IMG/VR virus record: IMGVR_UViG_3300027749_002876
Span: 248,001-312,000 of that record
Direction: 5' to 3' (one strand)
DNA: 64,000 nt
The notes under the pieces are model-generated. The model was not told the origin of the DNA. It ran no database searches and saw only the letters and a program-made list of their open reading frames with translations. A program made the translations under genes and the position numbers. Of the stretch, positions 22,686 through 49,716 are shown in pieces (within the stretch, counting starts at the first letter, position 1; every line of letters starts with the position of its first letter).

Positions 22686-22716
22686 AATATATTATCCTTT
22701 TGTTTTGTTTGTGAGA

Positions 22717-23649
22717 TTACGAACCAAATGTTGCGGCTGCAATGTAATTTCTAGCATAACCTACTCCTGTAGTATCAGTAGATACTACACCTGTATTTGA
22801 TACTAAATTGGTTATTGAAAGTGGACTACCGTTAGTGCCATAGCCAAATATAGCTTGTCCGGAGCTTCCATAGCCTGCAGCCGCCAAAGCATATCTAGTA
22901 GTACCAACACCAGTAGTATCTGTGGCAACTACGCCTGAATTAGAAACTTTATTGGTCATTGATAGTCCTGATCCAGTCCCTCCATATCCAAATATAGCTT
23001 TATCAGTTCCATAAGTTGCGGCAGCAAGATAACCTCTAGCAGTACCAACACCTGCAGTATCAGTAGCAACTACACCTGTATTTGATACTAGATTGGTTAT
23101 TGATACATCAGAAAAACCACTATCAAATCCATATCCAAAAATAGCTTTATCAGTTCCATAACCTGCGGCTGCTAATGCACCTCTAGCAGTACCTACACCT
23201 GTTGTATCTGTAGCAACTACCCCTGAATTAGAAACTTTATTGGTCATTGATATAGTATCAGATGTATACCCATATCCAAATATAGCCTTATCTGTGCCAT
23301 AACCTGCGGCAGCAAGATAACCTCTAGCAGTACCAACACCTGCAGTATCAGTAGCAACTACACCCGTGTTGCTTACTAGATTGGTTATAGATGAAGATAT
23401 ACCACTAACCAATCCATATCCAAATATTGCCTTGTCAGTGCCATAACTTGCGGCTGCCAACAAATTTCTAGCAGTACCTACACCTGAGGTATCATTAGCA
23501 ACTACACCGGTGCTTGATACAATGTTGGTTATTGATACTGCGCCGGATGAACCTGATCCATATCCAAAAATAGCTCTAATATTTGGGGGAGGTGCTGTAA
23601 TTGCAAATCCACCACTGAAATTTACACCTGAAAAAACTATGTCTGCCAT
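22717..23649 (-). CDS. six-repeat Kelch-like beta-propeller protein, copy 2
   Basis: same six-repeat architecture. Confidence 0.8.
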   Translation of the reverse strand: MADIVFSGVNFSGGFAITAPPPNIRAIFGYGSGSSGAVSITNIVSSTGVVANDTSGVGTARNLLAAASYGTDKAIFGYGLVSGISSSITNLVSNTGVVATDTAGVGTARGYLAAAGYGTDKAIFGYGYTSDTISMTNKVSNSGVVATDTTGVGTARGALAAAGYGTDKAIFGYGFDSGFSDVSITNLVSNTGVVATDTAGVGTARGYLAAATYGTDKAIFGYGGTGSGLSMTNKVSNSGVVATDTTGVGTTRYALAAAGYGSSGQAIFGYGTNGSPLSITNLVSNTGVVSTDTTGVGYARNYIAAATFGS

Positions 23650-23680
23650 ACTATGTTATCCTTTTGTTTTGTTTGTGAGA

Positions 23681-24637
23681 CTATCTACTGTAACTTGAGG
23701 CTGCTAGTTCTTGTCTAGCAGTACCGACACCAGTTGTATCCGTAGCAACTACACCCGTATTTGATACCAGGTTAGTGATTGCTGTTACTGTAGCAGATCC
23801 ATCATTTACACTACCATATCCAAAAATAGCTTTATCTGCACCGTATCCTGCGGCAGCCGGGTTTGCTCTTACGGTACCTACACCTGTAGTATCAGTAGCT
23901 ACTACACCTGTGTTACTTACTAAGTTGGTCACATTTGTAACAGGATATCCTACTCCATATCCAAATATAGCTTTATCAGTGCCATAAGTTGCGGCTCCTA
24001 ACTGACTTCTAGCGGTTCCAACTCCCGTAGTGTCTGTAGCAACTACACCCGTATTTGATACTAAGTTGGTCATTGATACTCGGGTAAAACCATTATCGGC
24101 TCCATATCCAAAAATAGCTTTGTCAGTTCCATAACCAGTGGCCGCAAGAGCTTGTCTAGCAGTACCAACACCTGTAGTATCTGTAGCAACAACACCTGTA
24201 TTTGACACTAGGTTGGTTATTGAGTACACGGTACTGCTTGTAGCACCATACCCAAATATAGCTTGTCCAGAGCTACCATATCCTGCGGCTGCTATATAAC
24301 TCCTAGCAGTACCTACACCTGTTGTATCACTAGCAACTACACCGGTGTTTGATACTAGATTGGTTACTGATTGATATACATTAGTATTATTCCTTCCATA
24401 ACCAAATATAGCTTTATCTGTACCATATACAGTGGCTGCTAGATTTACCCTAGTAGTGCCAACACCTGCAGTATCAGTAGCGACAACGCCTGTATTTGAT
24501 ACTAGGTTAGTTATTGATACATAAAGATTAGTGACAGTTGAACCATATCCAAATATTGCCTTAGCTGAGGGTGGAGGAGGTGTAATGCTAATCCCAGTAC
24601 CAATTGTTATTCCTGATCCAAATATTATATCTGCCAT
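23681..24637 (-). CDS. six-repeat Kelch-like beta-propeller protein, copy 3
   Basis: same six-repeat architecture. Confidence 0.8.
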   Translation of the reverse strand: MADIIFGSGITIGTGISITPPPPSAKAIFGYGSTVTNLYVSITNLVSNTGVVATDTAGVGTTRVNLAATVYGTDKAIFGYGRNNTNVYQSVTNLVSNTGVVASDTTGVGTARSYIAAAGYGSSGQAIFGYGATSSTVYSITNLVSNTGVVATDTTGVGTARQALAATGYGTDKAIFGYGADNGFTRVSMTNLVSNTGVVATDTTGVGTARSQLGAATYGTDKAIFGYGVGYPVTNVTNLVSNTGVVATDTTGVGTVRANPAAAGYGADKAIFGYGSVNDGSATVTAITNLVSNTGVVATDTTGVGTARQELAASSYSR

Positions 24638-28399: not shown

Positions 28400-29341
28400 T
28401 TATGCGTAACCGTAACTTGCGGCTGCTAGTCCACTTCTAGCAGTACCGACACCTGTAGTATCTGTAGCAACTACCCCGGTGTTTGATACTAGGTTGGTCA
28501 ACGATAGATAACTTTCTCTACCCCCGTATCCAAATATAGCAGTATCAACTCCATAGCCAGCGGCTGCTAGATAAGTTCTACCAGTACCGACAGCGGTAGT
28601 ATCTGTAGCAACAACTCCTGTGTTTGATACTAGGTTGGTCATTCCGTAATACGGGCTACCACCAGCTCCTAAACCAAATCCAAAGATAGCTTTATCGGTG
28701 CCAAAAGTTGCGGCGGCTAACGCATATCTGGCCTGCCCTACACCTGTTGTATCTGTAGCAACTACACCTGTATTTGATACTTTATTGGTTACTGATGTAG
28801 TGGTAGGCGTAGCAGAGTATCCATATCCAAAAATAGCTTTATCGGTACCATAACCTGCGGCTGCAGGGTTACTCCTAGCAGTGCCAACACCGGCTGTGTC
28901 GTTAGCAACTACACCTGTGTTACTTACTAGATTGGTTATTGCTGTTCTAACCCAGCTACCATTATTGTATATACCATAACCAAAGATGGCTTTATCTGTT
29001 CCATAGCCTGCGGCTGCTAGTCCACTTCTAGCAGTACCGACACCTGTAGTATCTGTAGCAACTACACCGGTATTTGATACTTTGTTGGTTATTGCGGTCT
29101 GTGGAGTACCATATCCATATATAGCTTTATCACTACCGTAGCCTGCGGCAGCTGGTTCGCTTCTAGCTGTACCAACACCTGTAGTATCTGCGGCAACTAC
29201 CCCTGTGTTACTTACTAGATTGGTCATTGATAAAGAAGGACCATTAGTACCATATCCAAATATTGCCTTACTTGTTGGGGGAGGAGGTTGTGGTGTTACA
29301 CTCAATCCACCCGTAAATGTTAGTCCACCTGTAAAATCCAT
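28400..29341 (-). CDS. six-repeat Kelch-like beta-propeller protein, copy 4
   Basis: same six-repeat architecture. Confidence 0.8.
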   Translation of the reverse strand: MDFTGGLTFTGGLSVTPQPPPPTSKAIFGYGTNGPSLSMTNLVSNTGVVAADTTGVGTARSEPAAAGYGSDKAIYGYGTPQTAITNKVSNTGVVATDTTGVGTARSGLAAAGYGTDKAIFGYGIYNNGSWVRTAITNLVSNTGVVANDTAGVGTARSNPAAAGYGTDKAIFGYGYSATPTTTSVTNKVSNTGVVATDTTGVGQARYALAAATFGTDKAIFGFGLGAGGSPYYGMTNLVSNTGVVATDTTAVGTGRTYLAAAGYGVDTAIFGYGGRESYLSLTNLVSNTGVVATDTTGVGTARSGLAAASYGYA

Positions 29342-29372
29342 AATATATTATCCTTTTGTTTTGTACTTCATA

Positions 29373-30317
29373 TTAAGTTGATCCGTAACTTGCGGCGGCT
29401 AGATGATACCTAGCAGTACCCACACCGGTTGTATTTGTAGCTACTACACCAGTATTTGATACCAGGTTGGTTATGGATGTGACATTAATCACACTACTAT
29501 ATCCATATCCAAATATAGCTTTATCATTATTATAAGTTGCGGCAGCTAATCCAAGCCTTGCAGTACCAACTCCAGTTGTATCCGTAGCAACAACACCAGT
29601 GTTTGATACTAGATTAGTTACTGCTGTATAACTAACGCCACCATTAAGAAAGCCGTAGCCAAATATGGCTTTATCAGTTCCATAACCTACGGCTGCTAGC
29701 TCACCTCTAGCAGTACCAACACCGGTAACATCATTGGCTACTACACCCGTATTTGATACTAGGTTAGTTAGTGAATAAGTTACGCTAGATTGAGTAGTAC
29801 CATAACCAAATATAGCAGTACCAGTTCCATAAGTTGCGGCTGCCAATCCAACTCTAGCTGTACCAACACCTGTAACATCATTTCCAACAACACCCGTATT
29901 TGATACTAGGTTGGTCATTGAATAAACGCCACCACCACCATAACCAAAAATAGCTTTATCTGTACCATAACCAGTGGCCGCAAGATTATTTCTAACAGTA
30001 CCAACACCAGTTGTATCTGTAGCAACAACACCTGTATTTGACACTAGATTAGTTATTGATACAGTACTTGCTCCAGTATATCCATATCCAAATATAGCTT
30101 TGTCGTTTCCATAGCCTGCGGCTGCTAGATAGTATCTAGCAGTGCCAACACCGGTAGTATCACCTGCAACTACACCTGTATTTGATACTTTGTTAGTCAT
30201 TGATACTGAGGGTGTACCTCCATATCCAAAAATAGCATATGTACTATATGAGGGTGGAGGTAGAGTTACTGAGTAACCACCACTAAATGTTACACCTGAA
30301 AAAACCATATCTGCCAT
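29373..30317 (-). CDS. six-repeat Kelch-like beta-propeller protein, copy 5
   Basis: same architecture; GATAAATA at 30336-30343 and AAGGAG RBS. Confidence 0.8.
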   Translation of the reverse strand: MADMVFSGVTFSGGYSVTLPPPSYSTYAIFGYGGTPSVSMTNKVSNTGVVAGDTTGVGTARYYLAAAGYGNDKAIFGYGYTGASTVSITNLVSNTGVVATDTTGVGTVRNNLAATGYGTDKAIFGYGGGGVYSMTNLVSNTGVVGNDVTGVGTARVGLAAATYGTGTAIFGYGTTQSSVTYSLTNLVSNTGVVANDVTGVGTARGELAAVGYGTDKAIFGYGFLNGGVSYTAVTNLVSNTGVVATDTTGVGTARLGLAAATYNNDKAIFGYGYSSVINVTSITNLVSNTGVVATNTTGVGTARYHLAAASYGST

Positions 30318-39532: not shown

Positions 39533-40471
39533 TTATATACTATAATTTGAGGCGGCTAGTGCATATCTAGCAGTACCAACACCAGTAACGTCATTAGCAA
39601 CTACACCGGTGTTTGATACTAGGTTAGTTATTGCTGTTACACTTGCAGGTGAAAGTATCCTTCCATATCCAAATATTGCAGTATCTAAACCATAACCTGC
39701 GGCTGCTAGAATATATCTAGCGGTACCAACACCAGATGTATTAGTTGCAACTACACCTGTATTTGATACTTTATTGGTTATTGAAACATTTGGATTTCCA
39801 CCATAACCAAAAATAGCTTTATCTGTGCCATAAGTTGCGGCTGCTAATTGAGTTCTGGCAGTACCAACACCTGCAGTATCAGTAGCAACTACACCGGTAT
39901 TACTTACTAGATTGGTTATTGAAACTGGACCAACTGCGCCGTCTTCTCCAAATCCAAAAATTGCTTTATCTGTACCATAACCTGCGGCTGCTAGTGCATA
40001 TCTAGCAGTACCAACACCGGAAACGTCGGTGGAGACTACACCTGTGTTACTTACTAGGTTAGTTACTGCTGAGTAGGAGTAGGTATATCCATATCCAAAT
40101 ATAGCTTTATCAGTACCATAACCTGCCGCTCCTAGTTGACTTCTAGCAGTCCCTACTCCCGTAGTATCTGTAGCAACTACCCCTGTATTACTTACTAAAT
40201 TGGTCATTGATACAAGTCCGGAGTTGTTAAATCCATATCCAAATAGTGCTTTATCAGTACCATAGCCCGCTGCCGCTAGTTCATCTCTAGCAGTACCGAC
40301 TCCTGTTGTATCGGTTGCAACAACCCCAGTGTTACTTACTAGATTAGTTATTGATATATATGATGGGCTGGAATATCCATATCCAAAGATTGCTTTATAA
40401 GAGGGTGGGGGAGGTGCTGTAATTGCAAATCCACCACTGAAATTTACACCTGAAAAAATTATGTCTGCCAT
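39533..40471 (-). CDS. six-repeat Kelch-like beta-propeller protein, copy 6
   Basis: same architecture; GATAAATA at 40491-40498 and AAGGA RBS. Confidence 0.8.
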   Translation of the reverse strand: MADIIFSGVNFSGGFAITAPPPPSYKAIFGYGYSSPSYISITNLVSNTGVVATDTTGVGTARDELAAAGYGTDKALFGYGFNNSGLVSMTNLVSNTGVVATDTTGVGTARSQLGAAGYGTDKAIFGYGYTYSYSAVTNLVSNTGVVSTDVSGVGTARYALAAAGYGTDKAIFGFGEDGAVGPVSITNLVSNTGVVATDTAGVGTARTQLAAATYGTDKAIFGYGGNPNVSITNKVSNTGVVATNTSGVGTARYILAAAGYGLDTAIFGYGRILSPASVTAITNLVSNTGVVANDVTGVGTARYALAASNYSI

Positions 40472-40502
40472 ACTATATTATCCTTTAATGTATTTATCAA
40501 AA

Positions 40503-40528
40503 AGAATAGGCTCCGAAGAGCCTATTCT
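40503..40528 (-). terminator. terminator of tmRNA locus, AGGCTC/GAGCCT family
   Basis: AGAATAGGCTC-TTCG-GAGCCTATTCT on minus strand plus T-run. Confidence 0.8.
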
Positions 40529-40529
40529 G

Positions 40530-40870
40530 CTATTTTCTGTTACGAGGGATAACTCCCCTAGCTGCCTTTATCAGGCCGCAATGCTAAACTGTGAGTCGTT
40601 TGCGGTTACTTTTTTTGCTTCTACGACCGGGTTGCCCCAATCCTACGGCTTCTGCTTTGCCGAGCTGTCCACTCTGTTACTTGTTGCCCTGTCGAAACTT
40701 TTCAGGCCCATCATAAAAAGAATATTAAAAAAACCAAAATAATAACACTCAATATTCCACATGTATATTGATATTTTACTTCAGGATCCATATTGTCTCC
40801 TTATGGTGGACCTGGGGAGATTCGCACTCCCGTCCAGAACACCTTTCCCGTTACTTCATACAGCAATAAC
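40530..40870 (-). ncRNA. ssrA: circularly permuted (two-piece) tmRNA
   Basis: Acceptor piece ends GACGGGAGTGCGAATCTCCCCAGGTCCACCA (3' end 40804). Coding piece starts GGGCCTGAAAAGTTTCGAC (40709). Acceptor stem GGGCCTG/CAGGTCC has G3:U70. Tag frame 40603-40568 reads ANDSQFSIAA then TGA TAA. Outer ends approximate. Confidence 0.92.
40711..40791 (-). CDS. 26-aa hydrophobic peptide encoded in the tmRNA intervening segment
   Basis: TAAGGAG-5nt-ATG; MDPEVKYQYTCGILSVIILVFLIFFL; ends 1 nt before the coding-piece 5' G. Confidence 0.6.
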   Translation of the reverse strand: MDPEVKYQYTCGILSVIILVFLIFFL

Positions 40871-40871
40871 T

Positions 40872-43800
40872 TCAATTGTATTTAGCATTGAAATACTTTT
40901 TTAACCAAGGCCAATCATAACTTAGACGCAATTTGCCTAACTCACCATTGACTTGTTCAACATATTCTACAGCATGTTTTGCACCATCGATACTATATTG
41001 GGCATAGTCACCCTCACCCACAGTTGACCATATCTTTAATCGTTGTTTGCTATCAGGACTATCATCTAGTTTTAACTTGATAACTTCACGGAAACTGGTA
41101 CGCCATGTACTAAATTCATCAGTGTTATATCGTGCTACACCCGAATTAATCTCTACAACTTCATGCTCATTGTCTAATGTAAAGTCCAAACCTTTACCCA
41201 TATTACTTAACGTAATCTGTTTATGGTATGCAATCATAGCTTGGTGACCATACACTAATCCATTTACAGGGTTACTTGCGTAGAAGATATAATGTTTAGG
41301 TATCTGTAATCTATCTGGTTGCCATGTAAAATCAAATTTACTATTGATACGTAACTTAGCAAACACTGTAAACATCCAAGGTGTTTCACTAGCTGTTGCG
41401 GCTGCATGATAAGCCTGAACACGACCATTTACACCATCAACACGAACAACACGATTAGGCAATCCTTTAGTCACGTTTAGTAAGTGTTCATAGTTCTCAT
41501 CAGCTCCAACTTCACCGTTGCTAAGGAAAACTATATCCAGTGGCTTAGACTGTATTAGTTTATCAGCTTTACTGATGTATGGATAATCATACAACTCTTT
41601 CTTAACATATTCTTTAGCTTCTTTCGGCACAATAATACGTGTGCCACCGGTAGTAGTAATTAATATGTTTTTAGATTCTTTAGACCATAAACTTATTGGT
41701 TCATTGTCAACAACTTTTATTTCTTTGTTGTCTTCCGTGACAAACGTAGCATAAGGCCAATTAAAATCAGTATTAGTAATAGAGACATGTGTATCGCTTT
41801 CAGTTATAAAGTTTGGAGCAGGTAAACGCTTTACTCTTTGATGTTGGTTAAAGTTAATTTTCTCAATTTTTTCTAAATTATCTAATTCTTCTATCAGCAT
41901 ACGTAATTTATTGACATTGATAAAGAATGTATCACCAAACTTTTGCAAGTTACTAGGGAATACATGCAATTGTTCCAGTGAAAACGGATCACATATGTAT
42001 GTAAAATCAAAATTAGTATAGTCACATATAGAACTACATACCCAAACATAATGTTCTTTTTTAATACCTAACTCATACAACATATTTTTTAATGTAGTTA
42101 GGTAATCATTATCATATTTAATAACTTCAACATTCTTTTTAGTTTTATTTTCTAATAATGATGTAATATTATCAGTAGTATCATTACCGTAATCAATCAA
42201 ATAAACGTCATACAAGCAGTTACTAGCGACCGCTCGCTTTGTTTTTACAAAGTTAAGATTACTTAAATGTTCTATAATTTTAATATGTTTAGTATCTTCT
42301 ATGAATGTTTCTTTATTGACCATAAAGGTAGTTCCCCAATGGCTCCATTGTGTTCCAAATATATGAACCATTTTCATTTGCCATGGGCTAGGATAATAGT
42401 CAAATGTAAAATTTGTATAATCTAATTCACTATTCAGTATCCAACATACTTCAGTTTCAGACTTGTTAAGACAACGATTAATAGTATCAACCCAGCTATT
42501 TAAATAACGTGTTTTTTGTATTTTTGGATAGCGTTGTTTTAATTCTTCGAATCTTTGTTGGCTTTCATTGTTGTTCTTATCAACAAAAAACATTGATAGG
42601 TTACTGTCGATTTCCACTGTTTGTTCTTCAACATAGTTAAATTCTCTATGACCCATAGTGTATAATGGTCCGTTAACATAATAAGTTTGTGTGTTCTTAC
42701 TATATTCGTTACCAAATACATTTATGTGCCTAAAGTTTTCACTATTTGGTCTCCAGTTAAAATCAAATTTATCATAATTTAAGTCAGGGTTGATGACCCA
42801 AAATACTTCATCCGGATGTTCTGCAATCAAATCCTCAAGTGTTGTTTTAAGTTTATAACGATTAACTGTATTACGGTTTGTAGTAATTGTAGTTTCTGTT
42901 CGTTCCATCAACACAACTTCAGTTGCGCCTGGCACAGTGTATCTAGGACCATTATCTGCCCACTGGTAAATTTGAGGAGGACTATGTGGATTAGGTCTCC
43001 AACTAAAATCAAATGTATTGTAATCGTCTACATTACTCACATGCCAATTTTTTAATTCTGGTTTAGTAATAGCAACAATGCTTTTAACATATTTTCGTTC
43101 TGATGCCCCATAAGTCCAATATTCTACTGTAGGTTCTACTGTAGCGTCATTCCATTTGTTACCAAAAACATATACATATGGTGGACTTTTGGGATCAGGT
43201 CTCCATGAATAATCAAAATTGTCAACAGGTATTACTACTAGCCACTTGTTCATATCAGGTAATGTAGTTGCTACTACATCATCCATATATTTAAATTCAG
43301 TAGCACCTGGACAAGTGTAAGTGATAGTAGGTTCACGTACAGCATCGTTATATTTGTTACCCCATACATAGATATACGCAGGTTCACGCGGATCAGGTCT
43401 CCAGCTAAAATCAAATGAAGATTTATCAACTGGTATAAGAGTTTCCCATCTATTAAGCTGTGGCTTTACATCAACTATACCTACATATTTGCGTTCTGTT
43501 GCACCTGGTACATGATATTCTAATGTAGGTTCTACTTCTGCCGGAACATATTTGTTTCCCCATGTATATATGTAGGGTTTTTCAGTCTCATCGGGATGCC
43601 AACTAAGTTGGTCTTCTACTACAGCCTGATGTATAACCCAATTATCCTTTGTAGGCAGTGCTTTTGCTCTGGTTGCGTCAATATATTTTACAGCACTGTT
43701 CTCATTTACACCGTCTGCATAATATACAGGGCCGCCCGTCTTTTGCCATTGTGTTCCAAATTTATATATGTATGGTATATCTTCGATATCAGGATGCCAA

Positions 43801-45215
43801 CTAAAATCAAACTCGGATGTGTCAATACTATCCGGTGTGAACCAACTTGCCATGATATTATGTTCGGGCATTATCCAATTTTTCATATTAGGTAATGCTT
43901 TTGCTTTGACCTCATCAACATATTTTACATGACTATATTCATTTGCACCTTCAGAATAATAAATAGGTCCGCCTATCTTTTGCCATTGTGTTCCAAACTG
44001 ATACTTATATGGTCTATCTTCAATGCCGGGGTGCCAACTAAAATCAAATTCAGATACATCCACACCATCAGGGATAGACCAATTAGTCATGTTTGATAAT
44101 GCTTTAGCTACAGGGTAATCAATATATTTTACATCTGTTGCATTGTTGACAACATAGCGAGGACCACCTGCTTTACTCCATTGGTCGGGGAATTGATATA
44201 TAAAATCAGGTTCATTTGGTTTTGGTTCCCAACTATAATCAAAAGTAGATGCATCAATATATGAAGGTACTATCCAATTATCTTTAAACTGTTTACGTGT
44301 TAATCGGTATTCATCTATATATTTGTATTGTGTTGCACCTTCAACAGTGTATGTTGCAGAAATCTTATCTTCTGCTTTAGTCCATTGATTACCCCATGCA
44401 TAGATAAATGCGGGTTCACGTGGATCTGGTCTCCAACTAAAGTCAAATTCATTTTTGTCTATATCATCAGCAATGACCCAACGATCCCATTTGGGTTCTA
44501 GTGCTACTTCATCTGTCATATATTTTATAATAGAAGAACCTTCAGTATGATATTCCAATACACTTTTAACTTCTACTGGGAAGAATTTGCAACCCCAATG
44601 ATAAATGAATGCAGGTTCACGTGGATCTGGTCTCCAACTAAAGTCAAATTTGTTCTTGTCTATATCATCAGTAATAACCCAACGATCCCATTTGGGTTCT
44701 AGTGCTACTTCATCTGTCATATATTTTATATTGATAGCACCGGGCACACGATATTCTATTACATTTTTAACTTCTACTGGGAAGAATTTGCAACCCCAAT
44801 GATAAATGAATGGCGGATCAGTTGGATCAGGATGCCATGAAAAATCAAATTTAGTTTCATCAATTAAATCATGTAAGATCCATCTATCATTTTTTTCGTT
44901 GTGTCTAAGTACTGGTTGTACATCAGCACGATAAATTGTTAATGGTAATTTATTATCAGCATTACACAACCATGTGCCGCTGTCTTTCTGATGTTGACTT
45001 GGCCAAATATTATCATGTTCATATGCCCATACATCTTCATCCGGCAAGAATTCAAAATCAAAATCCCAATCAAAATTTCGATAATCACAGTACTCGTTGA
45101 TTATCCAAAAATGTTCTGTTGTGGCTTGTTTTCTGGCCTCGGCTAGATTACGTGCTTGTTTTTCTCTGGGGTGGGCGTTTGGTTTATTACCAAAATAAAA
45201 TACATCTCTTAGCAT
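40872..45215 (-). CDS. 1447-aa repeat protein with degenerate glycosyltransferase-like C-terminal domains
   Basis: about ten ~67-aa repeats FDFSW(H/R)PDPxEPxYIYxWG...YxVPGATExKY; C-terminus similar to 57248..58201 protein. Confidence 0.7.
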   Translation of the reverse strand: MLRDVFYFGNKPNAHPREKQARNLAEARKQATTEHFWIINEYCDYRNFDWDFDFEFLPDEDVWAYEHDNIWPSQHQKDSGTWLCNADNKLPLTIYRADVQPVLRHNEKNDRWILHDLIDETKFDFSWHPDPTDPPFIYHWGCKFFPVEVKNVIEYRVPGAINIKYMTDEVALEPKWDRWVITDDIDKNKFDFSWRPDPREPAFIYHWGCKFFPVEVKSVLEYHTEGSSIIKYMTDEVALEPKWDRWVIADDIDKNEFDFSWRPDPREPAFIYAWGNQWTKAEDKISATYTVEGATQYKYIDEYRLTRKQFKDNWIVPSYIDASTFDYSWEPKPNEPDFIYQFPDQWSKAGGPRYVVNNATDVKYIDYPVAKALSNMTNWSIPDGVDVSEFDFSWHPGIEDRPYKYQFGTQWQKIGGPIYYSEGANEYSHVKYVDEVKAKALPNMKNWIMPEHNIMASWFTPDSIDTSEFDFSWHPDIEDIPYIYKFGTQWQKTGGPVYYADGVNENSAVKYIDATRAKALPTKDNWVIHQAVVEDQLSWHPDETEKPYIYTWGNKYVPAEVEPTLEYHVPGATERKYVGIVDVKPQLNRWETLIPVDKSSFDFSWRPDPREPAYIYVWGNKYNDAVREPTITYTCPGATEFKYMDDVVATTLPDMNKWLVVIPVDNFDYSWRPDPKSPPYVYVFGNKWNDATVEPTVEYWTYGASERKYVKSIVAITKPELKNWHVSNVDDYNTFDFSWRPNPHSPPQIYQWADNGPRYTVPGATEVVLMERTETTITTNRNTVNRYKLKTTLEDLIAEHPDEVFWVINPDLNYDKFDFNWRPNSENFRHINVFGNEYSKNTQTYYVNGPLYTMGHREFNYVEEQTVEIDSNLSMFFVDKNNNESQQRFEELKQRYPKIQKTRYLNSWVDTINRCLNKSETEVCWILNSELDYTNFTFDYYPSPWQMKMVHIFGTQWSHWGTTFMVNKETFIEDTKHIKIIEHLSNLNFVKTKRAVASNCLYDVYLIDYGNDTTDNITSLLENKTKKNVEVIKYDNDYLTTLKNMLYELGIKKEHYVWVCSSICDYTNFDFTYICDPFSLEQLHVFPSNLQKFGDTFFINVNKLRMLIEELDNLEKIEKINFNQHQRVKRLPAPNFITESDTHVSITNTDFNWPYATFVTEDNKEIKVVDNEPISLWSKESKNILITTTGGTRIIVPKEAKEYVKKELYDYPYISKADKLIQSKPLDIVFLSNGEVGADENYEHLLNVTKGLPNRVVRVDGVNGRVQAYHAAATASETPWMFTVFAKLRINSKFDFTWQPDRLQIPKHYIFYASNPVNGLVYGHQAMIAYHKQITLSNMGKGLDFTLDNEHEVVEINSGVARYNTDEFSTWRTSFREVIKLKLDDSPDSKQRLKIWSTVGEGDYAQYSIDGAKHAVEYVEQVNGELGKLRLSYDWPWLKKYFNAKYN
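44405..44810. repeat. recent tandem duplication, 201-nt period
   Basis: TGGATCTGGTCTCCAACTAAAGTCAAATT at 44421 and 44622; near-identical 67-aa units. Confidence 0.85.
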
Positions 45216-45301: not shown

Positions 45302-46396
45302 ATGCCTAAAAAGCATTTATCAATAACAGGAACACGCATGAGCAGAACACAATTTGAATTTACACCAGGAAAACCAATTAGAACATACGGAGCCAATGGC
45401 TCATGGAGAGATTGGAGCACCGATGAACTTGTGGGGGCAAAATTAAATTATCTATCAGGTTGGAAATGTGGTGCAGGCGTTGATAGCTTATTCATCGATA
45501 TGGATGGTGGTGTATGGACAGCTAGTTGTCGTGTAGGTGGCAAATTAGGTAGTGTTTGGGATGACTTTTCAGTTCCGGAAGATTGGATTGATTGTACTAA
45601 AAATGTATGTAGTTGCGGTGCTGACTTGTTTATCCCAAAAACTAGTCTTGTTGAATTCAAGCCATTACTACGAAAAGGACAAGAATTGCCAACTCAGGGT
45701 GAAATGTTAAATGAACAACTAACTGAGTTTGTAGGTATGGAACGAACACACGCTAGTACTCAAAAACAAATATATTGGGAAATAGGTCGTAGATGTAATT
45801 ATGATTGTAGTTATTGCTGGCCTTGGATACATAACAATACTGACCCACACAAGCCATTGGAAGATTTAATGAGAGCTACTCATTTGATTGAGAAAAAATT
45901 CACCAAAGGTGAAAGCGTTAACTTCATTATTAGTGGTGGTGAACCCACTGTTAATAAAGATTTCTTAGATTGGTTACGTTATTTAAATGCATGCGGACAT
46001 CATGTGAGCTTGCATAGTAATGGTAGTCGATTGCCTGACTATTACAAAGAAGTTATACATTACGGTGATTTGAACTTGAGTGTTCATTATGAGTTCTATA
46101 ACAGAGAAAAGTTTGTTAAAGTGGTTGAGGCTATTGCAAAAGAAAAATCAGAACACGGTGGTTGTGGTCACTTAGAAGTTAAGTTTATGATGGCTCCGCA
46201 CAACCGTGATGAGACATTGAGCTTAGAAGCTGAATTAAAAGAATTACCTCACTTTGTAGATTACTGCACCTGGGCTATTGTTCCTATACGAGGAGACATG
46301 AATAACAAAATCAGTTCACCTGATACCGGTTCAGGCAGTGAAGTTATGGAAGGCTACACTAAGGAAGATTACATTTTATTCGGAGATCGTAAATAA
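45302..46396 (+). CDS. radical SAM enzyme with N-terminal SPASM-like domain
   Basis: CNYDCSYC, SGGEPT, SNGSR; N-terminal WKC...C...CTKNVCSC. Confidence 0.9.
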   Translation: MPKKHLSITGTRMSRTQFEFTPGKPIRTYGANGSWRDWSTDELVGAKLNYLSGWKCGAGVDSLFIDMDGGVWTASCRVGGKLGSVWDDFSVPEDWIDCTKNVCSCGADLFIPKTSLVEFKPLLRKGQELPTQGEMLNEQLTEFVGMERTHASTQKQIYWEIGRRCNYDCSYCWPWIHNNTDPHKPLEDLMRATHLIEKKFTKGESVNFIISGGEPTVNKDFLDWLRYLNACGHHVSLHSNGSRLPDYYKEVIHYGDLNLSVHYEFYNREKFVKVVEAIAKEKSEHGGCGHLEVKFMMAPHNRDETLSLEAELKELPHFVDYCTWAIVPIRGDMNNKISSPDTGSGSEVMEGYTKEDYILFGDRK

Positions 46397-46397
46397 T

Positions 46398-48320
46398 ATG
46401 GAAAAAGACGAATGGATGGTAGAAACGTTAATACCAAGAAACACCGGTATACGCAAGAAGCCTAACATACAAGCTGTAACATATTTTAATGCTACTAGAA
46501 AAACTAAATTAGTACTAGCTGTAATGGGGTGCTGGGCTATTTGGATGCCACCATATAACTTAGGAAGACTAGCTTCATTAACTAGATCATCCGGATATGC
46601 AACAAAATGTTTTGATTTCAATGTTCAAAGTTATCACGACTTTAGAGAAATGTATCCTGGTTCTGATTTAGAGGATGCTTGGGGTACAGGTAATTGGTGG
46701 TGGTGGAAAGAACGTTATTTTGACAAAATACATGAAAGAAACATTCCACTACTAGAAAAATATGTGGATGAAATATTAGCAGAAGATCCGGATATTGTAG
46801 GATTAAGTTTATACTTTACTAACAGATTGCCGTCAGAGTGGGTAGCTAATGAAATTAAAAGACGTAGACCAAGTGTACTAATTATATTTGGTGGACCTGA
46901 ATGCCATTCAGAAGATTACGTTCCGCCCGAATCGGTCGACCACTGGTTTACGGGAGAATCTGAACAATTACTATTAGATTTTTTAGAGAAATACGAAACG
47001 GGTGAGAAGATTACTGAACGTCATTTGGGCAGTTTATATAGTTCTACTAGAATTGATATTGATAGTTTACCCTTCCCCGACTATTCTGATTTTGACTTTT
47101 CTAAGTATTTAGGACATTTATCAATTAATACTGAAATCAGCAGAGGGTGTATTGCTAAATGTAGCTTTTGTTCCGAAACATATTATTGGAAATATAGAGA
47201 TAGAGAAGCACATTCAATATTAGATGAGATAGAGCACCAAGTAAAAACCAACGAAATTGTTGCTGTTTCATTTGTTGATAGTTTAGTCAATGGCAATCTA
47301 AAAAGTCTCAAAGGTTTTGCTGAAGGATTAATTGATCGTAAATTAAACATTAGATGGTGGGGATATGCCAGATGTGATGGACGTATGGATGGTGCTTACT
47401 TTGATTTGCTTCGTGCTAGCGGTTGTGACGGATTCAGTTACGGAGTAGAAAGCGGTAGCCAAAAAGTATTAGACTTAATGCAGAAAAAAGTTAAAGTATC
47501 TGATATTAATGAAAATCTATATCATTCAGGTAGAGTGGGAATGACAGCTAATGCTAATTGGATTATCGGTGCGCCCGGAGAAGATATTGAGGCATTAGCG
47601 CATAGTATGAACCTTATTTGGAATCATAGAAATAATATACATTCAATTAGTCCAGGCAATGGTTTAGGTGACACGTTGGGTACTGACTATGATAATAGAG
47701 AAAAATACAACATAAACCCTCGTAACAAACCTTTCTTAGGACATTGGTACTCATTAGACTGGACTAATACTCAATTAAACAGATACATTAGAATGAAACT
47801 ATTTGTTATTCTTTTAAAGATAGCAAAAGATCATGGAGTGATTGTTAATCTTAATGGTGACAAAGGTATAACCTCACATTACGATTTAAAATTTGATGAT
47901 GACAATTATATTGTTGATAATATTGAATATGAGAATTTTGAATACCATCTATTAAAAACTGGTTACGGTTTTTTTGCTGACACCGTTGTGAATGAAGTAT
48001 TTTCTTTGTTCAGAATATTGTGGAGAATTAAAGGTGGTTTTGAAATTACGCTAAACTTTGAGCAAGAGGTTGATGTTGAGGCATTTGGTGGATTATTAAC
48101 TCATACACCACATACTTATAATGCAACACATTATTTCAAAATAGATAAAGAGGGTAATTTTCAATCTAATAATACATATGAGTTTTTTTATGAACCAGAA
48201 TCTTGGGATAGAATTGAGAATAAGAGTTTTAAATATGAAGGTAATGTTTCAGGTTATTGGGGTGAAGTAAAGATTGCTCCTGTGAAACGTCACATATGGA
48301 TAGAGAACAATATAAATTAA
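46398..48320 (+). CDS. cobalamin-binding (class B-type) radical SAM enzyme
   Basis: PPYNLGRL, DIVGLS, IIFGGPE, GESE, LPFPDY, SRGCIAKCSFC, GVESGSQKVL; start moved to MEKDEW (GGAG RBS). Confidence 0.9.
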   Translation: MEKDEWMVETLIPRNTGIRKKPNIQAVTYFNATRKTKLVLAVMGCWAIWMPPYNLGRLASLTRSSGYATKCFDFNVQSYHDFREMYPGSDLEDAWGTGNWWWWKERYFDKIHERNIPLLEKYVDEILAEDPDIVGLSLYFTNRLPSEWVANEIKRRRPSVLIIFGGPECHSEDYVPPESVDHWFTGESEQLLLDFLEKYETGEKITERHLGSLYSSTRIDIDSLPFPDYSDFDFSKYLGHLSINTEISRGCIAKCSFCSETYYWKYRDREAHSILDEIEHQVKTNEIVAVSFVDSLVNGNLKSLKGFAEGLIDRKLNIRWWGYARCDGRMDGAYFDLLRASGCDGFSYGVESGSQKVLDLMQKKVKVSDINENLYHSGRVGMTANANWIIGAPGEDIEALAHSMNLIWNHRNNIHSISPGNGLGDTLGTDYDNREKYNINPRNKPFLGHWYSLDWTNTQLNRYIRMKLFVILLKIAKDHGVIVNLNGDKGITSHYDLKFDDDNYIVDNIEYENFEYHLLKTGYGFFADTVVNEVFSLFRILWRIKGGFEITLNFEQEVDVEAFGGLLTHTPHTYNATHYFKIDKEGNFQSNNTYEFFYEPESWDRIENKSFKYEGNVSGYWGEVKIAPVKRHIWIENNIN

Positions 48321-48330
48321 GGTATATTAA

Positions 48331-49716
48331 ATGAATAACACTAAAACGTTTTGCAACATGGCATGGGATTATCCTATGTTCTTTATGTTTAAAAATGCAG
48401 TAGGTTACTGCTGTAGAACACCTAGAATAGATATTGATAATGAATTACTAGAGGAGATGAAAGAGGACTTTTGGTCTAATCATCCTAGCTTTGTCAATAG
48501 AAGAAAAGAATTAATCAATGGTATAAAAAGTAAAGATTGTGATACCTGTTGGCAATTAGAAGATGCTGGATTTAAAAGCTCTAGGAATGATGACCACTTC
48601 AATATGTTTATGAAGAAAAATTATCCCAATTTTAATGAAAAATTAGACCAGCGTTTATTTAAATTCTTTCCAGGCATTGAACGTAGTAACTATTCAAATG
48701 TAATTGAAATTGTATTGAATAACACATGTGATGCAAAATGTACATATTGTAGTGAACATTATAGTACTCAATGGGTAACTGAAAAAAAGAAGTTTGGTGG
48801 AATAAGTCCGTATTATACTGACATGAATGACAGAAATCCTAGAGCAGAAGAACTGTTCTGGTCATGGTATGAAAACAAAGTATTACATACTAATAAACGT
48901 TTTGGATTCATTGGTGGTGAACCGTTAATTATTGATGCATTATATGAATGTTTTGATAAATTAATTGAAATACATGAAAGAAAACAACTATCAATTCAGT
49001 CTGATGCGGATAAAATGGAACTATGTATTACTAGTAATATGAATACACCTCCTGCATATTTTGAAAAGTTTATGGGGTATGTGAAAAAACTAGAAAAACA
49101 TTTCAGAATTATCATTCAAGTAAGCGGTGAAAACGTAGGTGACGATTTAGAATATATACGACACGGTGTTAAATGGAAACGTTGGTCTAGAAATGTTGAA
49201 TATTTATTAGACAATACTAACATTACGCTAAACTTTTTACCATGCTTAAGCTTGTTAACTATTCCTAGATTTAACGAATACATACAATATGTAAACAAGT
49301 TAAACAAAAAATACGGAGTAATGAAAATACATCAAAACATTGTTACATGGCCAGTAGAACAAAGTCCTATGATAGCTCCTAAAGAATTTTCCCAGTACTT
49401 TGATCCATGCATTGACAGTGTGAATGAAATTCTTGCCGGAGAAATTAAGGATCGATTTATACGAGGTGAATATGAAAACCTATTATTGTGGCTTACAAAA
49501 ACACGTGAAGCTATTATAAGCAATCCAAGTGCAAGTGAACCTGTTGAGAATGCTAAAAAGTTTTATTCTTTTTTTAATGAGTTAGATCGTAGAAGAAATA
49601 CTAGTGTATTGAAAATATTTCCTGAAATAAAAGAATTTTATGACACAGGTAAACAGTTATATGAAGGCACAGTACAACCACGCATTATACCAATTGTAGC
49701 TGTGACAAATGAATAA
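48331..49716 (+). CDS. radical SAM enzyme with N-terminal twitch-like Cys domain
   Basis: FC...YCC...CDTCW; CDAKCTYC; IGGEPL. Confidence 0.88.
   Translation: MNNTKTFCNMAWDYPMFFMFKNAVGYCCRTPRIDIDNELLEEMKEDFWSNHPSFVNRRKELINGIKSKDCDTCWQLEDAGFKSSRNDDHFNMFMKKNYPNFNEKLDQRLFKFFPGIERSNYSNVIEIVLNNTCDAKCTYCSEHYSTQWVTEKKKFGGISPYYTDMNDRNPRAEELFWSWYENKVLHTNKRFGFIGGEPLIIDALYECFDKLIEIHERKQLSIQSDADKMELCITSNMNTPPAYFEKFMGYVKKLEKHFRIIIQVSGENVGDDLEYIRHGVKWKRWSRNVEYLLDNTNITLNFLPCLSLLTIPRFNEYIQYVNKLNKKYGVMKIHQNIVTWPVEQSPMIAPKEFSQYFDPCIDSVNEILAGEIKDRFIRGEYENLLLWLTKTREAIISNPSASEPVENAKKFYSFFNELDRRRNTSVLKIFPEIKEFYDTGKQLYEGTVQPRIIPIVAVTNE

What the first reader, a model, noticed from the sequence alone, without database searches (positions are those of the whole stretch)
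40710..40803. A membrane micropeptide gene exactly fills the tmRNA intervening segment
Seen: immediately after the CCA end comes TAAGGAG-ACAAT-ATG and a 26-codon ORF (MDPEVKYQYTCGILSVIILVFLIFFL) whose TGA ends one base before the mature 5' G of the coding piece; RBS plus ORF occupy essentially all 94 nt. Known: this segment is normally excised during maturation and regarded as non-coding; single-TM peptides of this size include type I toxins and membrane-protein regulators. Inference: the precursor is a dual-function RNA in which peptide synthesis competes with or reports on tmRNA maturation. I am not aware of this arrangement being described.
Basis: partly seen in the sequence, partly recalled or inferred. 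Interest (0 to 1): 0.85.

Follow-up and report, generated by a model that had tools for sequence, protein, structure and literature searches.

The report
Micropeptide gene inside phage tmRNA spacer
The spacer that is cut out of a phage's two-piece tmRNA precursor carries a real, conserved gene for a 26-residue membrane peptide, and about a third of related phage tmRNA genes use the same spacer to carry small protein genes, which I found described nowhere.

Summary
The window holds a permuted (two-piece) tmRNA gene on the minus strand. Its 94-nt intervening segment (40803-40710) contains AGGAG, an ATG five bases later, 26 codons, and a TGA one base before the mature 5' G.

It is not a chance ORF.
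- Among 106 distinct intervening segments from related uncultured phages, 35 carry an ORF starting at nt 7-15. Shuffles give 9.0 +/- 2.7.
- ORF presence is tied to a Shine-Dalgarno motif (Fisher 8e-12).
- dN/dS is 0.04-0.5 in five ORF families.
- The window's own peptide family (MDxE..YQ..CGI..) keeps its frame in 7 DNA variants (dN/dS about 0.2).
- The same family also occurs as free-standing 29-codon genes with no tmRNA nearby.

The "exact fill" has a structural cause. Every segment, coding or not, is closed by a roughly 10-bp helix and ends in TGAT, which pairs with ACCA. The Shine-Dalgarno sequence is the helix's 5' strand. The last codons and the stop lie in its 3' strand.

The gene is supported. 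Coupling between translation and tmRNA maturation follows from the geometry but is untested. The peptide's function is unknown. I rate this a new variant of a known kind, with high interest.

The parts
40875..40904 (-). Promoter-like site (TTAAAA, 18 nt, TACAAT) just upstream of the tmRNA. It overlaps the end of the 1447-aa ORF.
   Evidence: Consensus scan only, 9 of 12 matches. The Rfam beta_tmRNA model also aligns its 5' promoter-like leader here.
40804..40865 (-). Acceptor piece of the two-piece tmRNA: T-arm and 3' acceptor strand CAGGTCC, ending in ACCA at 40807-40804.
   Evidence: Rfam tmRNA_permuted alignment starts at 40865. ARAGORN 3' tRNA domain.
40710..40803 (-). Intervening segment, 94 nt, expected to be removed during maturation.
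   Evidence: It lies between ARAGORN's 3' and 5' tRNA domains and is an unaligned insert in both Rfam models.
40796..40803 (-). 5' strand of the closing helix (UAAGGAGA). It contains the Shine-Dalgarno sequence AGGAG (40801-40797).
   Evidence: Predicted fold. The helix register is supported by covariation in 105 segments.
40711..40791 (-). 26-codon ORF plus TGA: MDPEVKYQYTCGILSVIILVFLIFFL. Short acidic N-terminus followed by a C-terminal hydrophobic helix of about 17 residues.
   Evidence: Conserved family.
40714..40721 (-). 3' strand of the closing helix (UCUUUUUA). It encodes the last residues (F-F-L) of the peptide.
40710..40713 (-). Conserved TGAT, predicted to pair with ACCA (three pairs and one C/A mismatch). 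Its TGA is the ORF's stop codon.
   Evidence: TGAT occurs in 89 of 105 distinct segments. Pairing from the fold of the precursor core.
40503..40709 (-). Coding piece of the tmRNA: 5' acceptor strand GGGCCTG (G3 opposite U), tag reading frame 40603-40568 (ANDSQFSIAA, two stops), and the 3' hairpin.
40503..40528 (-). Terminator-like hairpin (11 pairs) followed by a T run. Likely end of the tmRNA transcription unit.
   Evidence: It also aligns to the last helix of the beta_tmRNA model.

Best explanation
The window comes from an uncultured freshwater phage (171-kb IMG/VR contig). The phage carries its own two-piece tmRNA gene with a promoter-like site and a terminator-like hairpin. In this phage lineage the loop between the acceptor piece and the coding piece is a cargo slot. 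A conserved helix of about 10 bp closes the loop and stacks on the acceptor stem through ACCA/UGAU pairing. Inside the loop sits either structured non-coding RNA or a small protein gene. Here the cargo is a 26-codon gene for a single-pass membrane micropeptide anchored by its C-terminal end. Relatives of this peptide also exist as ordinary free-standing phage genes.

Shown: the gene is under purifying selection. Its Shine-Dalgarno sequence forms the 5' strand of the closing helix. Its last codons and stop codon overlap the 3' strand and the TGAT motif.

Inferred mechanism: the peptide is made from the primary tmRNA transcript. Translation most likely begins on the nascent precursor, because the Shine-Dalgarno sequence emerges about 75-80 nt before its pairing partner is transcribed. 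A ribosome sitting at the UGA would also cover the 5' acceptor strand. So translation and formation of the RNase P substrate exclude each other on one molecule. Once the ribosome leaves, the 18-bp helix forms, hides the Shine-Dalgarno sequence, and licenses excision of the segment. The expected result is a short, self-limiting pulse of peptide tied to tmRNA expression.

What the peptide does in the membrane is unknown.
For: tmRNA identity and boundaries. Phage origin: large terminase and contig identity.

Family-wide ORF excess: 35 of 106 distinct segments against 9.0 +/- 2.7 in shuffles. The Shine-Dalgarno motif goes with the ORF (26/6 against 9/65, Fisher 8e-12). Starts cluster at nt 12-15 (29 of 35; range 7-15). 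17 of 35 ORFs stop in the TGA of TGAT.

Purifying selection: dN/dS is 0.04-0.5 in five ORF families, with the fewest changes at codon position 2. In the window family, 7 DNA variants of the 26-codon ORF all stay open, with dN/dS about 0.07-0.45. In codons outside the search motif, pN/pS is 0.35 and replacements are among I, L, V, F, S and T. T fraction is 0.60 at codon position 2 against 0.29 and 0.36 at positions 1 and 3, in 20 membrane-type ORFs. Non-coding segments show no such phasing.

Independent context: homologous 29-codon genes sit between protein genes in L319/L321 and L327. Rfam finds no tmRNA in those loci. All segments found through the flank alone have intact ORFs. One cargo ORF (L029, 44 aa, Cys-rich) matches phrog_13558 at E 7e-11.

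Closing helix: 90% of positions paired in register, against 41-57% in other registers and 63% in shuffles, with up to 6 pair types per position. Coding segments have weaker stems (-6.5 against -10.0 kcal/mol, p 9e-7) and more G-U pairs.

Fold: one continuous helix of acceptor stem, ACCA/UGAU and closing stem. The Shine-Dalgarno sequence is paired, the AUG is unpaired, and the interior is no more stable than shuffles (z -0.54).

RNA: a lake metatranscriptome contig (run X25) spans 40664-40820, across the whole segment, at depth 9.3. Its ORF variant carries T10V, S15T, a silent change at V20, and L22F.

Cargo turnover: the tmRNAs nearest in mature sequence (82-91% identity) carry different cargo.
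Against: There is no direct evidence of translation. No ribosome profiling or proteomics exists for this uncultured phage.

The RNA evidence comes from assembled contigs in one run. DNA carry-over cannot be excluded, and depth over the segment is far below that over the mature pieces.

The Shine-Dalgarno sequence is predicted to be paired in the full-length precursor, so translation might be inefficient.

The variants of the window family were found with a peptide-motif pattern, which biases codons 1-13 toward conservation. In the 29-codon group, uncorrected pN/pS outside the motif is 0.78, so the helix is constrained mainly in hydrophobicity.

The distinct segments are related to one another, so the counts are not independent events.

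Eight of 35 ORFs run past the segment into the mature coding piece. This shows the in-segment stop is not obligatory and leaves open which RNA species is translated.
Confidence: 0.6

Rival explanations
1. Chance ORF. A T-rich spacer with a conserved purine-rich start and a conserved TGAT end happens to be open in one frame, and nothing is translated.
For: The Shine-Dalgarno-like start and the TGA both belong to structural motifs that are also present in non-coding segments. For one 94-nt AT-rich segment my rough estimate of such an ORF arising by chance is a few per cent (estimate, not computed). Shuffles still give about 9 ORF-positive segments of 106.
Against: There is a four-fold excess over shuffles and a strong Shine-Dalgarno/ORF association. 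dN/dS is below 1 in several families, including the window's. T is phased at codon position 2. Homologues exist outside any tmRNA. One cargo ORF belongs to a PHROG family.
Confidence: 0.04
2. The gene is real, but it is translated only after processing. Excision by RNase P and 3' end trimming releases the segment as a mini-mRNA of about 94 nt. Its Shine-Dalgarno sequence is locked by pairing between its own 5' and 3' ends, and its stop codon lies one base from the 3' end. Any 3' trimming would open the helix and also destroy the stop codon. That would turn it into a non-stop message handled by the tmRNA it was cut from.
For: The helix joins the two ends of the excised fragment, much as the fold-back pairing in hok mRNA does (from my own knowledge). 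17 of 35 ORFs stop exactly in the TGA of TGAT. Stems of coding segments are weaker.
Against: Eight of 35 ORFs, including the well-conserved MFENWHW family, have no stop inside the segment. From an excised fragment these could only give non-stop products. Excised spacers of stable-RNA precursors are normally degraded quickly (general knowledge). RNA depth over the segment is low.
Confidence: 0.2
3. Regulatory leader-type ORF. The act of translating the segment matters, for example by delaying or chaperoning folding and processing of the tmRNA, and the peptide itself is irrelevant.
For: Ribosome occupancy and the processing-competent helix are mutually exclusive by geometry. The cargo sequences are very diverse.
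Against: Selection acts at the amino-acid level. The same peptide family occurs as free-standing genes and in an orphan copy without a coding piece (L326). Two thirds of related tmRNAs manage with non-coding segments.
Confidence: 0.06
4. Type I toxin-like module. The peptide is a membrane-damaging toxin kept silent by sequestration of its Shine-Dalgarno sequence, possibly also by an antisense RNA, and released at a set time in infection, for example for host shut-off or lysis timing.
For: Size, a hydrophobic C-terminal helix and a paired Shine-Dalgarno sequence resemble Ibs, ShoB, TisB and Hok-type toxins (resemblance from my own knowledge). Two weak promoter-like sites lie on the opposite strand inside the segment. 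Feature-based look-alikes are small bacterial membrane proteins such as YncL, YkgR and YniD, but scores are at most 0.81, so these are leads only.
Against: No antitoxin RNA is shown. The antisense promoter matches are at the level expected by chance (6 found against 3.8 +/- 1.9). Free-standing homologues sit in ordinary gene arrays with no evident lock. Other cargo ORFs are soluble.
Confidence: 0.1

Closest known systems
Permuted (two-piece) tmRNA genes of Alpha-/Betaproteobacteria, Cyanobacteria and aquatic phages (Rfam RF04321, RF01850; Keiler, Shapiro and Williams 2000; phage example Melnitz, PMC9004378)
   Same: Gene order is acceptor piece, intervening segment, coding piece. The tRNA-like domain has G3 opposite U and a CCA end. 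The tag frame ends in AA. Two-piece tmRNAs are already known in aquatic phages (53 among 402 tmRNA-encoding isolate genomes, PMC9004378).
   Different: The intervening sequence is treated as non-coding in the literature I could read. The 2025 tmRNA database paper notes only one tRNA gene and one repetitive element inside such segments (PMC11915505). Here the segment carries a selected protein gene. In cultured phage Melnitz the segment also has GGAG, 7 nt, ATG and a 39-codon ORF, but no CDS is annotated there.
Group I introns with homing-endonuclease genes in the T-loop of tmRNA genes (PMC11915505)
   Same: A protein-coding ORF lies inside a sequence that is removed from the tmRNA precursor.
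   Different: There is no intron here: Rfam finds no intron family in the window. The pieces are not re-ligated. The cargo is a micropeptide or small protein rather than a homing endonuclease. Removal would be by tRNA-processing enzymes, not by self-splicing.
Dual-function RNAs (SgrS/SgrT, RNAIII/hld, SR1/SR1P)
   Same: One primary transcript gives both a functional RNA and a small peptide.
   Different: In those RNAs the same mature molecule does both jobs. Here the coding part is the segment discarded from the mature RNA, and the two functions are separated by processing.
Type I toxin mRNAs with fold-back inhibition (hok/sok, tisB, ibs, shoB)
   Same: A small hydrophobic peptide of about 20-50 aa. 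The ribosome-binding site is paired by a long-range 5'-3' interaction. RNA processing is expected to change translatability.
   Different: No antisense antitoxin has been found and toxicity is untested. The pairing helix is primarily a conserved element of the tmRNA precursor, also present in non-coding segments.
Small ORFs interspersed in phage tRNA gene clusters (T4-type phages; my own knowledge)
   Same: Short protein genes are co-transcribed with stable RNAs and released by tRNA-processing nucleases.
   Different: Here the ORF sits inside a single functional RNA gene, between two halves that must pair with each other. Its start and stop are built into the processing helix.

Membership tests
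Permuted (two-piece) tmRNA gene | Acceptor piece (T-arm and 3' acceptor strand with CCA) lies upstream of the coding piece (5' acceptor strand and tag frame) in one gene. | tested here: met
   ARAGORN 'Permuted' call with the 3' domain before the 5' domain. RF04321 98.9 bits against gathering 47; RF01850 95.4 bits against 84.
Permuted (two-piece) tmRNA gene | Alanine identity pair G3:U70 and a tag reading frame that ends in hydrophobic residues. | tested here: met
   GGGCCUG pairs with CAGGUCC, putting G3 opposite U. Tag ANDSQFSIAA followed by two stops.
Permuted (two-piece) tmRNA gene | The intervening segment is removed, giving two RNA pieces. | tested here: inconclusive
   Metatranscriptome contigs cover the coding piece at depths up to about 4300 and the segment at 0-9. 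These are assembled contigs of mixed relatives, whose segments differ in sequence.
Bona fide small protein-coding gene | Shine-Dalgarno sequence, start and stop in a conserved arrangement. | tested here: met
   AGGAG, 5 nt, ATG. Fisher 8e-12 for Shine-Dalgarno against ORF; most starts at nt 12-15.
Bona fide small protein-coding gene | Purifying selection on the encoded peptide. | tested here: met
   dN/dS about 0.07-0.45 in the window family and 0.04-0.5 in other families. The hydrophobic helix is constrained mainly in composition. T is phased at codon position 2.
Bona fide small protein-coding gene | Homologues in an independent genomic context. | tested here: met
   Free-standing 29-codon homologues in L319/L321 and L327, with no tmRNA in those loci.
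Bona fide small protein-coding gene | Translation demonstrated. | not testable with these tools
   No ribosome profiling or proteomics is available for this uncultured phage.
Type I toxin-antitoxin | Cis- or trans-encoded antisense RNA antitoxin. | tested here: inconclusive
   Two 9-of-12 promoter-like matches lie on the opposite strand inside the segment, but the total number of matches equals the chance expectation.
Type I toxin-antitoxin | The peptide is toxic when expressed. | not testable with these tools
   Requires expression in a laboratory strain.
Group I intron with homing endonuclease in tmRNA | Group I ribozyme core around the ORF. | tested here: not met
   Only the two tmRNA families reach threshold in the window. 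The segment interior has no significant structure, z -0.54.
Leader-peptide / attenuator ORF | The peptide sequence is free to vary and only translation matters. | tested here: not met
   dN/dS is below 1 and the family also occurs outside the tmRNA.

The most novel reading that the evidence does not exclude
The spacer of phage two-piece tmRNA genes is a dedicated expression cassette in which tmRNA maturation and micropeptide synthesis are mechanistically coupled. The closing helix acts as a timer that shuts translation off. The excised or trimmed spacer is a near-non-stop message whose product is policed by the tmRNA it was cut from. The slot already supplies a purine-rich helix strand, a T-rich strand and a built-in TGA. 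It could therefore also be a cradle for de novo birth of membrane micropeptides, which can later move out as free-standing genes.
Probability: 0.2. Interest if true: 0.9.

Novelty: new variant of a known kind. Interest (0 to 1): 0.75.

Why it matters
tmRNA is among the best-studied bacterial RNAs, and the spacer of its permuted form has been treated as discarded, non-coding RNA. This work finds that aquatic phages repeatedly load that spacer with small protein genes, mostly single-pass membrane micropeptides.

This matters in three ways.
- It adds a new gene location that annotation pipelines skip. Most of these ORFs are shorter than usual gene-caller limits and lie inside an RNA gene.
- It gives a natural system in which translation and stable-RNA processing compete for the same helix.
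- It supplies a large, evolutionarily replicated set of phage micropeptides for functional study.

It also makes a question testable: whether ribosome-rescue RNA expression and membrane-peptide delivery are deliberately linked during infection.

Tried and rejected
- BLAST of the tmRNA region and of 10 kb around it against 50,697 deposited phage genomes found nothing. No close cultured relative exists.
- tblastn of two spacer peptides against the same collection found nothing. The low-complexity filter may have masked them.
- The genome-contig scan with a two-anchor pattern gave 29 hits, but only 3 are tmRNAs. These lie on short MAG contigs assigned to unrelated phyla, so they look like misbinned phage DNA. 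The rest are chance matches inside genes. I therefore could not compare spacers of bacterial host tmRNAs.
- Pfam and PHROG scans of ten larger spacer ORFs gave only one solid hit, phrog_13558.
- PHROG scans of the neighbours of the free-standing homologues and of the 1447-aa neighbour gave nothing.
- The ESM Atlas look-alike search gave only sub-threshold small-membrane-protein leads.
- The classical two-piece tmRNA papers (PMC16621, PMC516066) are not held in the library. What I say about them rests on my own knowledge and on later papers that cite them.
- I did not run the large protein homology searches. Peptides of 26-29 aa fall below or at the limits of gene callers and of those tools.
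- Rejected readings: chance ORF, RNA-structure-only conservation (the interior is unstructured and substitutions follow codon phase), and group I intron.

Full report
**1. What is at the coordinates**

ARAGORN finds a single RNA gene in the window, a permuted tmRNA at 40896..40480 on the minus strand with tag ANDSQFSIAA. Rfam confirms it with tmRNA_permuted (98.9 bits, gathering 47) and beta_tmRNA (95.4 bits, gathering 84).

ARAGORN's domain map places the end of the 3' tRNA domain (..TCCACCA) at 40804 and the start of the 5' tRNA domain (GGGCCTG) at 40709. The intervening segment is therefore 40803..40710, 94 nt.

A promoter-like site (40904-40875) and a terminator-like hairpin (40528-40503) bracket the gene. 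It therefore looks like its own transcription unit of about 370 nt.

The window is identical, over the fetched locus L001, to the 171-kb contig IMGVR_UViG_3300009151_003179. It encodes a large terminase. It has no close relative among deposited phage genomes. Runs that hold the sequence are mostly freshwater and lake metagenomes, with a few labelled marine.

**2. Is the ORF more than chance?**

I collected homologous tmRNA genes in two ways that do not depend on what the spacer contains. The first was loci encoding a relative of the neighbouring 1447-aa protein. The second was a scan of viral contigs for a conserved stretch of the coding piece. ARAGORN's domain boundaries gave 116 distinct intervening segments, ranging from a few to 220 nt. 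A regex on the tRNA-domain anchors found four further loci (L027, L028, L030, L063) that share a 382-nt segment. These four were not in the ARAGORN-based counts.

- Of the 106 distinct segments of 40 nt or more, 35 have an ATG or GTG start at nt 7-15 (the search window was nt 5-22; 29 start at nt 12-15). Each is followed by an ORF of at least 20 codons covering at least 70% of the segment. Dinucleotide-preserving shuffles give 9.0 +/- 2.7, with a maximum of 16 in 300.
- A Shine-Dalgarno core in the first 12 nt accompanies the ORF in 26 of 35 cases, and occurs in only 6 of 71 segments without an ORF (Fisher 8e-12).
- The ORFs fall into at least 15 sequence clusters, 10 of them single-pass membrane peptides of about 21-41 aa. 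The rest are soluble small proteins.
- A 122-codon ORF fills the 382-nt segment of L027.
- A 44-aa Cys-rich ORF in L029 matches phage family phrog_13558 at E 7e-11.
- Within five families, pairwise dN/dS is 0.04-0.5, and codon position 2 changes least.
- In 20 representative membrane-type ORFs, T makes up 0.60 of codon position 2 against 0.29 and 0.36 at positions 1 and 3. Non-coding segments show no phase. A merely T-rich spacer would not be phased.

**3. The window's own peptide**

A degenerate DNA pattern for M-D-x-E-x-x-Y-Q-x-x-C-G-I found 7 stretches in viral contigs and 13 in metagenome contigs.

Seven distinct DNA variants of the 26-codon ORF all keep the frame and the stop. They differ by T10V, S15T, V16I and L22F plus silent changes, with dN/dS about 0.07-0.45 in the pairs where synonymous changes were seen.

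A 29-codon branch (MDEEMIYQLVCGILIVVSLVSFACYLIFF and relatives) sits in the spacers of other tmRNAs (L089, L332). A scan using only the flanking acceptor and Shine-Dalgarno sequence found only intact ORFs, among them a 32-codon relative in L362.

The 29-codon form also occurs as a free-standing gene. In L319/L321 it lies directly after a 44-codon ORF and before a 195-codon ORF. In L327 it lies directly after a 186-codon ORF, with its own AGGAG. Rfam finds no tmRNA in these loci. Synonymous sites between spacer and free-standing copies are saturated, while the peptide stays recognisable.

Because the search pattern fixes codons 1-13, I repeated the count on codons 14 onward. pN/pS is 0.35 in the 26-codon group and 0.78 (uncorrected) in the 29-codon group. 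Replacements are almost all among I, L, V, F and A, and a Cys-Tyr pair is invariant. Selection on the helix therefore acts mainly on hydrophobicity.

Spacer copies end in FF or FL, while free copies end in FK or LK. The last residues of the spacer copies are dictated by the helix strand they overlap.

**4. Why the ORF "exactly fills" the segment**

In 105 distinct segments, positions 1-10 pair with positions -5 to -14. 90% of cells form standard pairs, against 41-57% in other registers and 63% when partners are shuffled among sequences. Up to six pair types occur per position.

The last four bases are TGAT in 89 of 105 segments, coding or not. In the predicted fold of the precursor core, UGAU pairs with the discriminator A and CCA, with one C/A mismatch. 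The acceptor stem, ACCA/UGAU and the closing stem then form one helix of 18 pairs.

The purine-rich start of the segment and the TGA at its end are thus pre-existing structural elements. The ORFs have been fitted to them: the Shine-Dalgarno sequence lies in the 5' strand, and the last codons and the stop lie in the 3' strand and the TGAT.

Unrelated cargo ORFs consequently share C-terminal residues such as VSL or KSL, which the helix encodes.

Coding segments have weaker closing stems (-6.5 against -10.0 kcal/mol, p 9e-7) and more G-U pairs. They also have lower G+C, and they are longer. The interior of the window's segment folds no better than shuffles (z -0.54). That is what one expects of a message rather than a structured RNA.

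**5. Cargo turnover**

The tmRNAs closest to the window's in mature sequence (82-91% identity) carry other membrane-peptide families (MENFSKW.., MFENWHW..), a 59-codon ORF, or non-coding hairpins. Spacer content changes much faster than the tmRNA itself. The spacer behaves as an exchangeable slot.

A scan biased toward Shine-Dalgarno-bearing spacers found 49 more permuted-tmRNA calls in viral contigs. These include tmRNAs with alphaproteobacterial-type tags and a conserved 38-aa membrane ORF.

The cultured Methylophilales phage Melnitz has the same layout: a closing stem, then GGAG, 7 nt, ATG and a 39-codon basic ORF. GenBank annotates no CDS there. The paper describing Melnitz discusses the two-piece tmRNA and a glutamine riboswitch, and a text search for the term 'intervening' in it returned no occurrences.

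**6. RNA evidence (weak)**

In lake metatranscriptome run X25, one 169-nt contig covers 40664-40820 with 8 differences. It therefore spans the coding piece, the whole spacer and the acceptor end. Depth is 9.3, against 0-2 on the adjacent protein gene. The five differences inside the spacer give T10V (two of the five), S15T, a silent change at V20, and L22F.

In run X21 the coding piece reaches depths in the thousands, while the spacer shows none.

These are assembled contigs from mixed relatives, and DNA carry-over is possible. They are compatible with a precursor that contains the spacer and with abundant mature pieces. They prove neither.

**7. How it most likely works**

Shown: a selected micropeptide gene sits in the loop of the precursor helix, with its ribosome-binding site and its stop built into the helix.

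Inferred from the geometry and from standard knowledge of ribosome footprints and RNase P substrates:
- The Shine-Dalgarno sequence is free only until the 3' strand is transcribed, about 75-80 nt later.
- A ribosome at the UGA would cover the GGGCCUG strand, so the acceptor stem cannot form while the ORF is being translated.
- After termination the long helix forms, hides the Shine-Dalgarno sequence and allows excision.

This would give a brief burst of peptide coupled to tmRNA transcription. The peptide has about 9 polar residues, then about 17 hydrophobic residues and no tail. It must therefore insert into the membrane after release from the ribosome.

Its function is open. Possibilities include modulation of a host membrane protein, a toxin-like action or an exclusion function. 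I found no way to discriminate among these with the tools.

The main rival is translation from the excised fragment, whose stop lies one base from its 3' end. It is attractive but has to explain the 8 of 35 ORFs that have no stop inside the segment.

**8. Comparison with what is known, and novelty**

Two-piece tmRNAs in aquatic phages are known (PMC9004378). ORFs inside tmRNA genes are known only as homing-endonuclease genes in group I introns (PMC11915505). Peptide-coding dual-function RNAs and fold-back-locked toxin mRNAs are known.

The 2025 tmRNA database paper, covering 11,946 permuted entries, records only a tRNA gene and a repetitive element as notable spacer contents. Six full-text searches found no report of protein-coding spacers. 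The Sinorhizobium small-proteome paper concerns only the tag peptide.

Within the limits of that library, the arrangement appears undescribed. I class it as a new variant of a known kind.

**9. Limits**

- There is no direct proof of translation.
- The counts use related sequences, which are not independent.
- The direction of transfer between spacer and free-standing copies is unknown.

Noticed in passing
L012:8749-8823, L031:10537-10611, L065:11593-11665, L069:12021-12095: A tRNA with anticodon CUA (called tRNA-Pyl by ARAGORN, so amber-suppressor-like) lies from 16 nt to about 2.4 kb downstream of the tmRNA in several related phage loci. It may indicate TAG reassignment or suppression in this phage group.
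   Followed up: no
L326:1500-2902: A metagenome contig has a complete permuted tmRNA with a short 24-nt spacer at 2627-2831. About 1 kb upstream it also has an orphan acceptor-piece end, Shine-Dalgarno sequence, window-family ORF (1593-1673) and TGAT, with no coding piece behind. The micropeptide gene persists without a functional tmRNA around it.
   Followed up: partly
L035 spacer (within L035:8793-9192); L086 and L087 spacers: Some non-coding spacers look tRNA-like. With a relaxed threshold ARAGORN calls a tRNA-like element at nt 7-88 of the L035 spacer. The L086 and L087 spacers begin with a T-arm-like GGGTTCGAnnCCC.
   Followed up: partly
L270:1951-2419, also L201, L289, L258: Spacers of 159-186 nt in tmRNAs with alphaproteobacterial-type tags (ANDNFA..) carry two overlapping frames. 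One is a short acidic ORF right after the Shine-Dalgarno sequence next to the CCA. The other is a conserved 38-aa membrane ORF (..SKWM..YI.WSICADI.LL.GI.YL.FF) that starts internally and stops in TGAT.
   Followed up: partly
L365:1583-1723 (Methylophilales phage Melnitz, MZ577097.1): The spacer of this cultured phage's tmRNA has a 9-bp closing stem, GGAG, 7 nt, ATG and a basic 39-codon ORF that runs on into the coding piece. GenBank has no CDS there, and locus tags _87 and _88 are skipped. A glutamine riboswitch hit lies at 1904-1952, overlapping the annotated 3' end of the tmRNA feature (1490-1942).
   Followed up: partly
window 21735-24637, 28400-30317, 39533-40471 (-): Six paralogous proteins of about 312 aa (65-73% identical) are built from six internal repeats of about 45 aa (..TNLVSNTGVVATDTTGVGTAR..AAAGYGTDKAIFGYG..). 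One of them lies immediately downstream of the tmRNA.
   Followed up: partly
window 40872-45215 (-): A 1447-aa ORF just upstream of the tmRNA contains many copies of an FDFSWRPDP..FIY.WG.. repeat and has no PHROG match. Its C-terminal third is conserved (59-100% identity) in 77 viral contigs and served as the synteny anchor.
   Followed up: partly
window 45302-49716 (+): A divergent gene block on the plus strand has radical-SAM-like proteins (weak PHROG matches) next to the structural and tmRNA region.
   Followed up: no
L273 spacer: In one relative of the MKTPD.. peptide family the spacer ORF is broken (MIETI, then a stop, with the hydrophobic part in another frame). Decayed cargo therefore exists too.
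   Followed up: no
window 40698 (loose ends): In two RNA runs, contigs that match the coding piece end at 40698 and continue directly into Illumina adapter sequence. That is 11 nt inside the predicted mature 5' end (40709). It could be a fragment end in relatives or a reverse-transcription stop.
   Followed up: no
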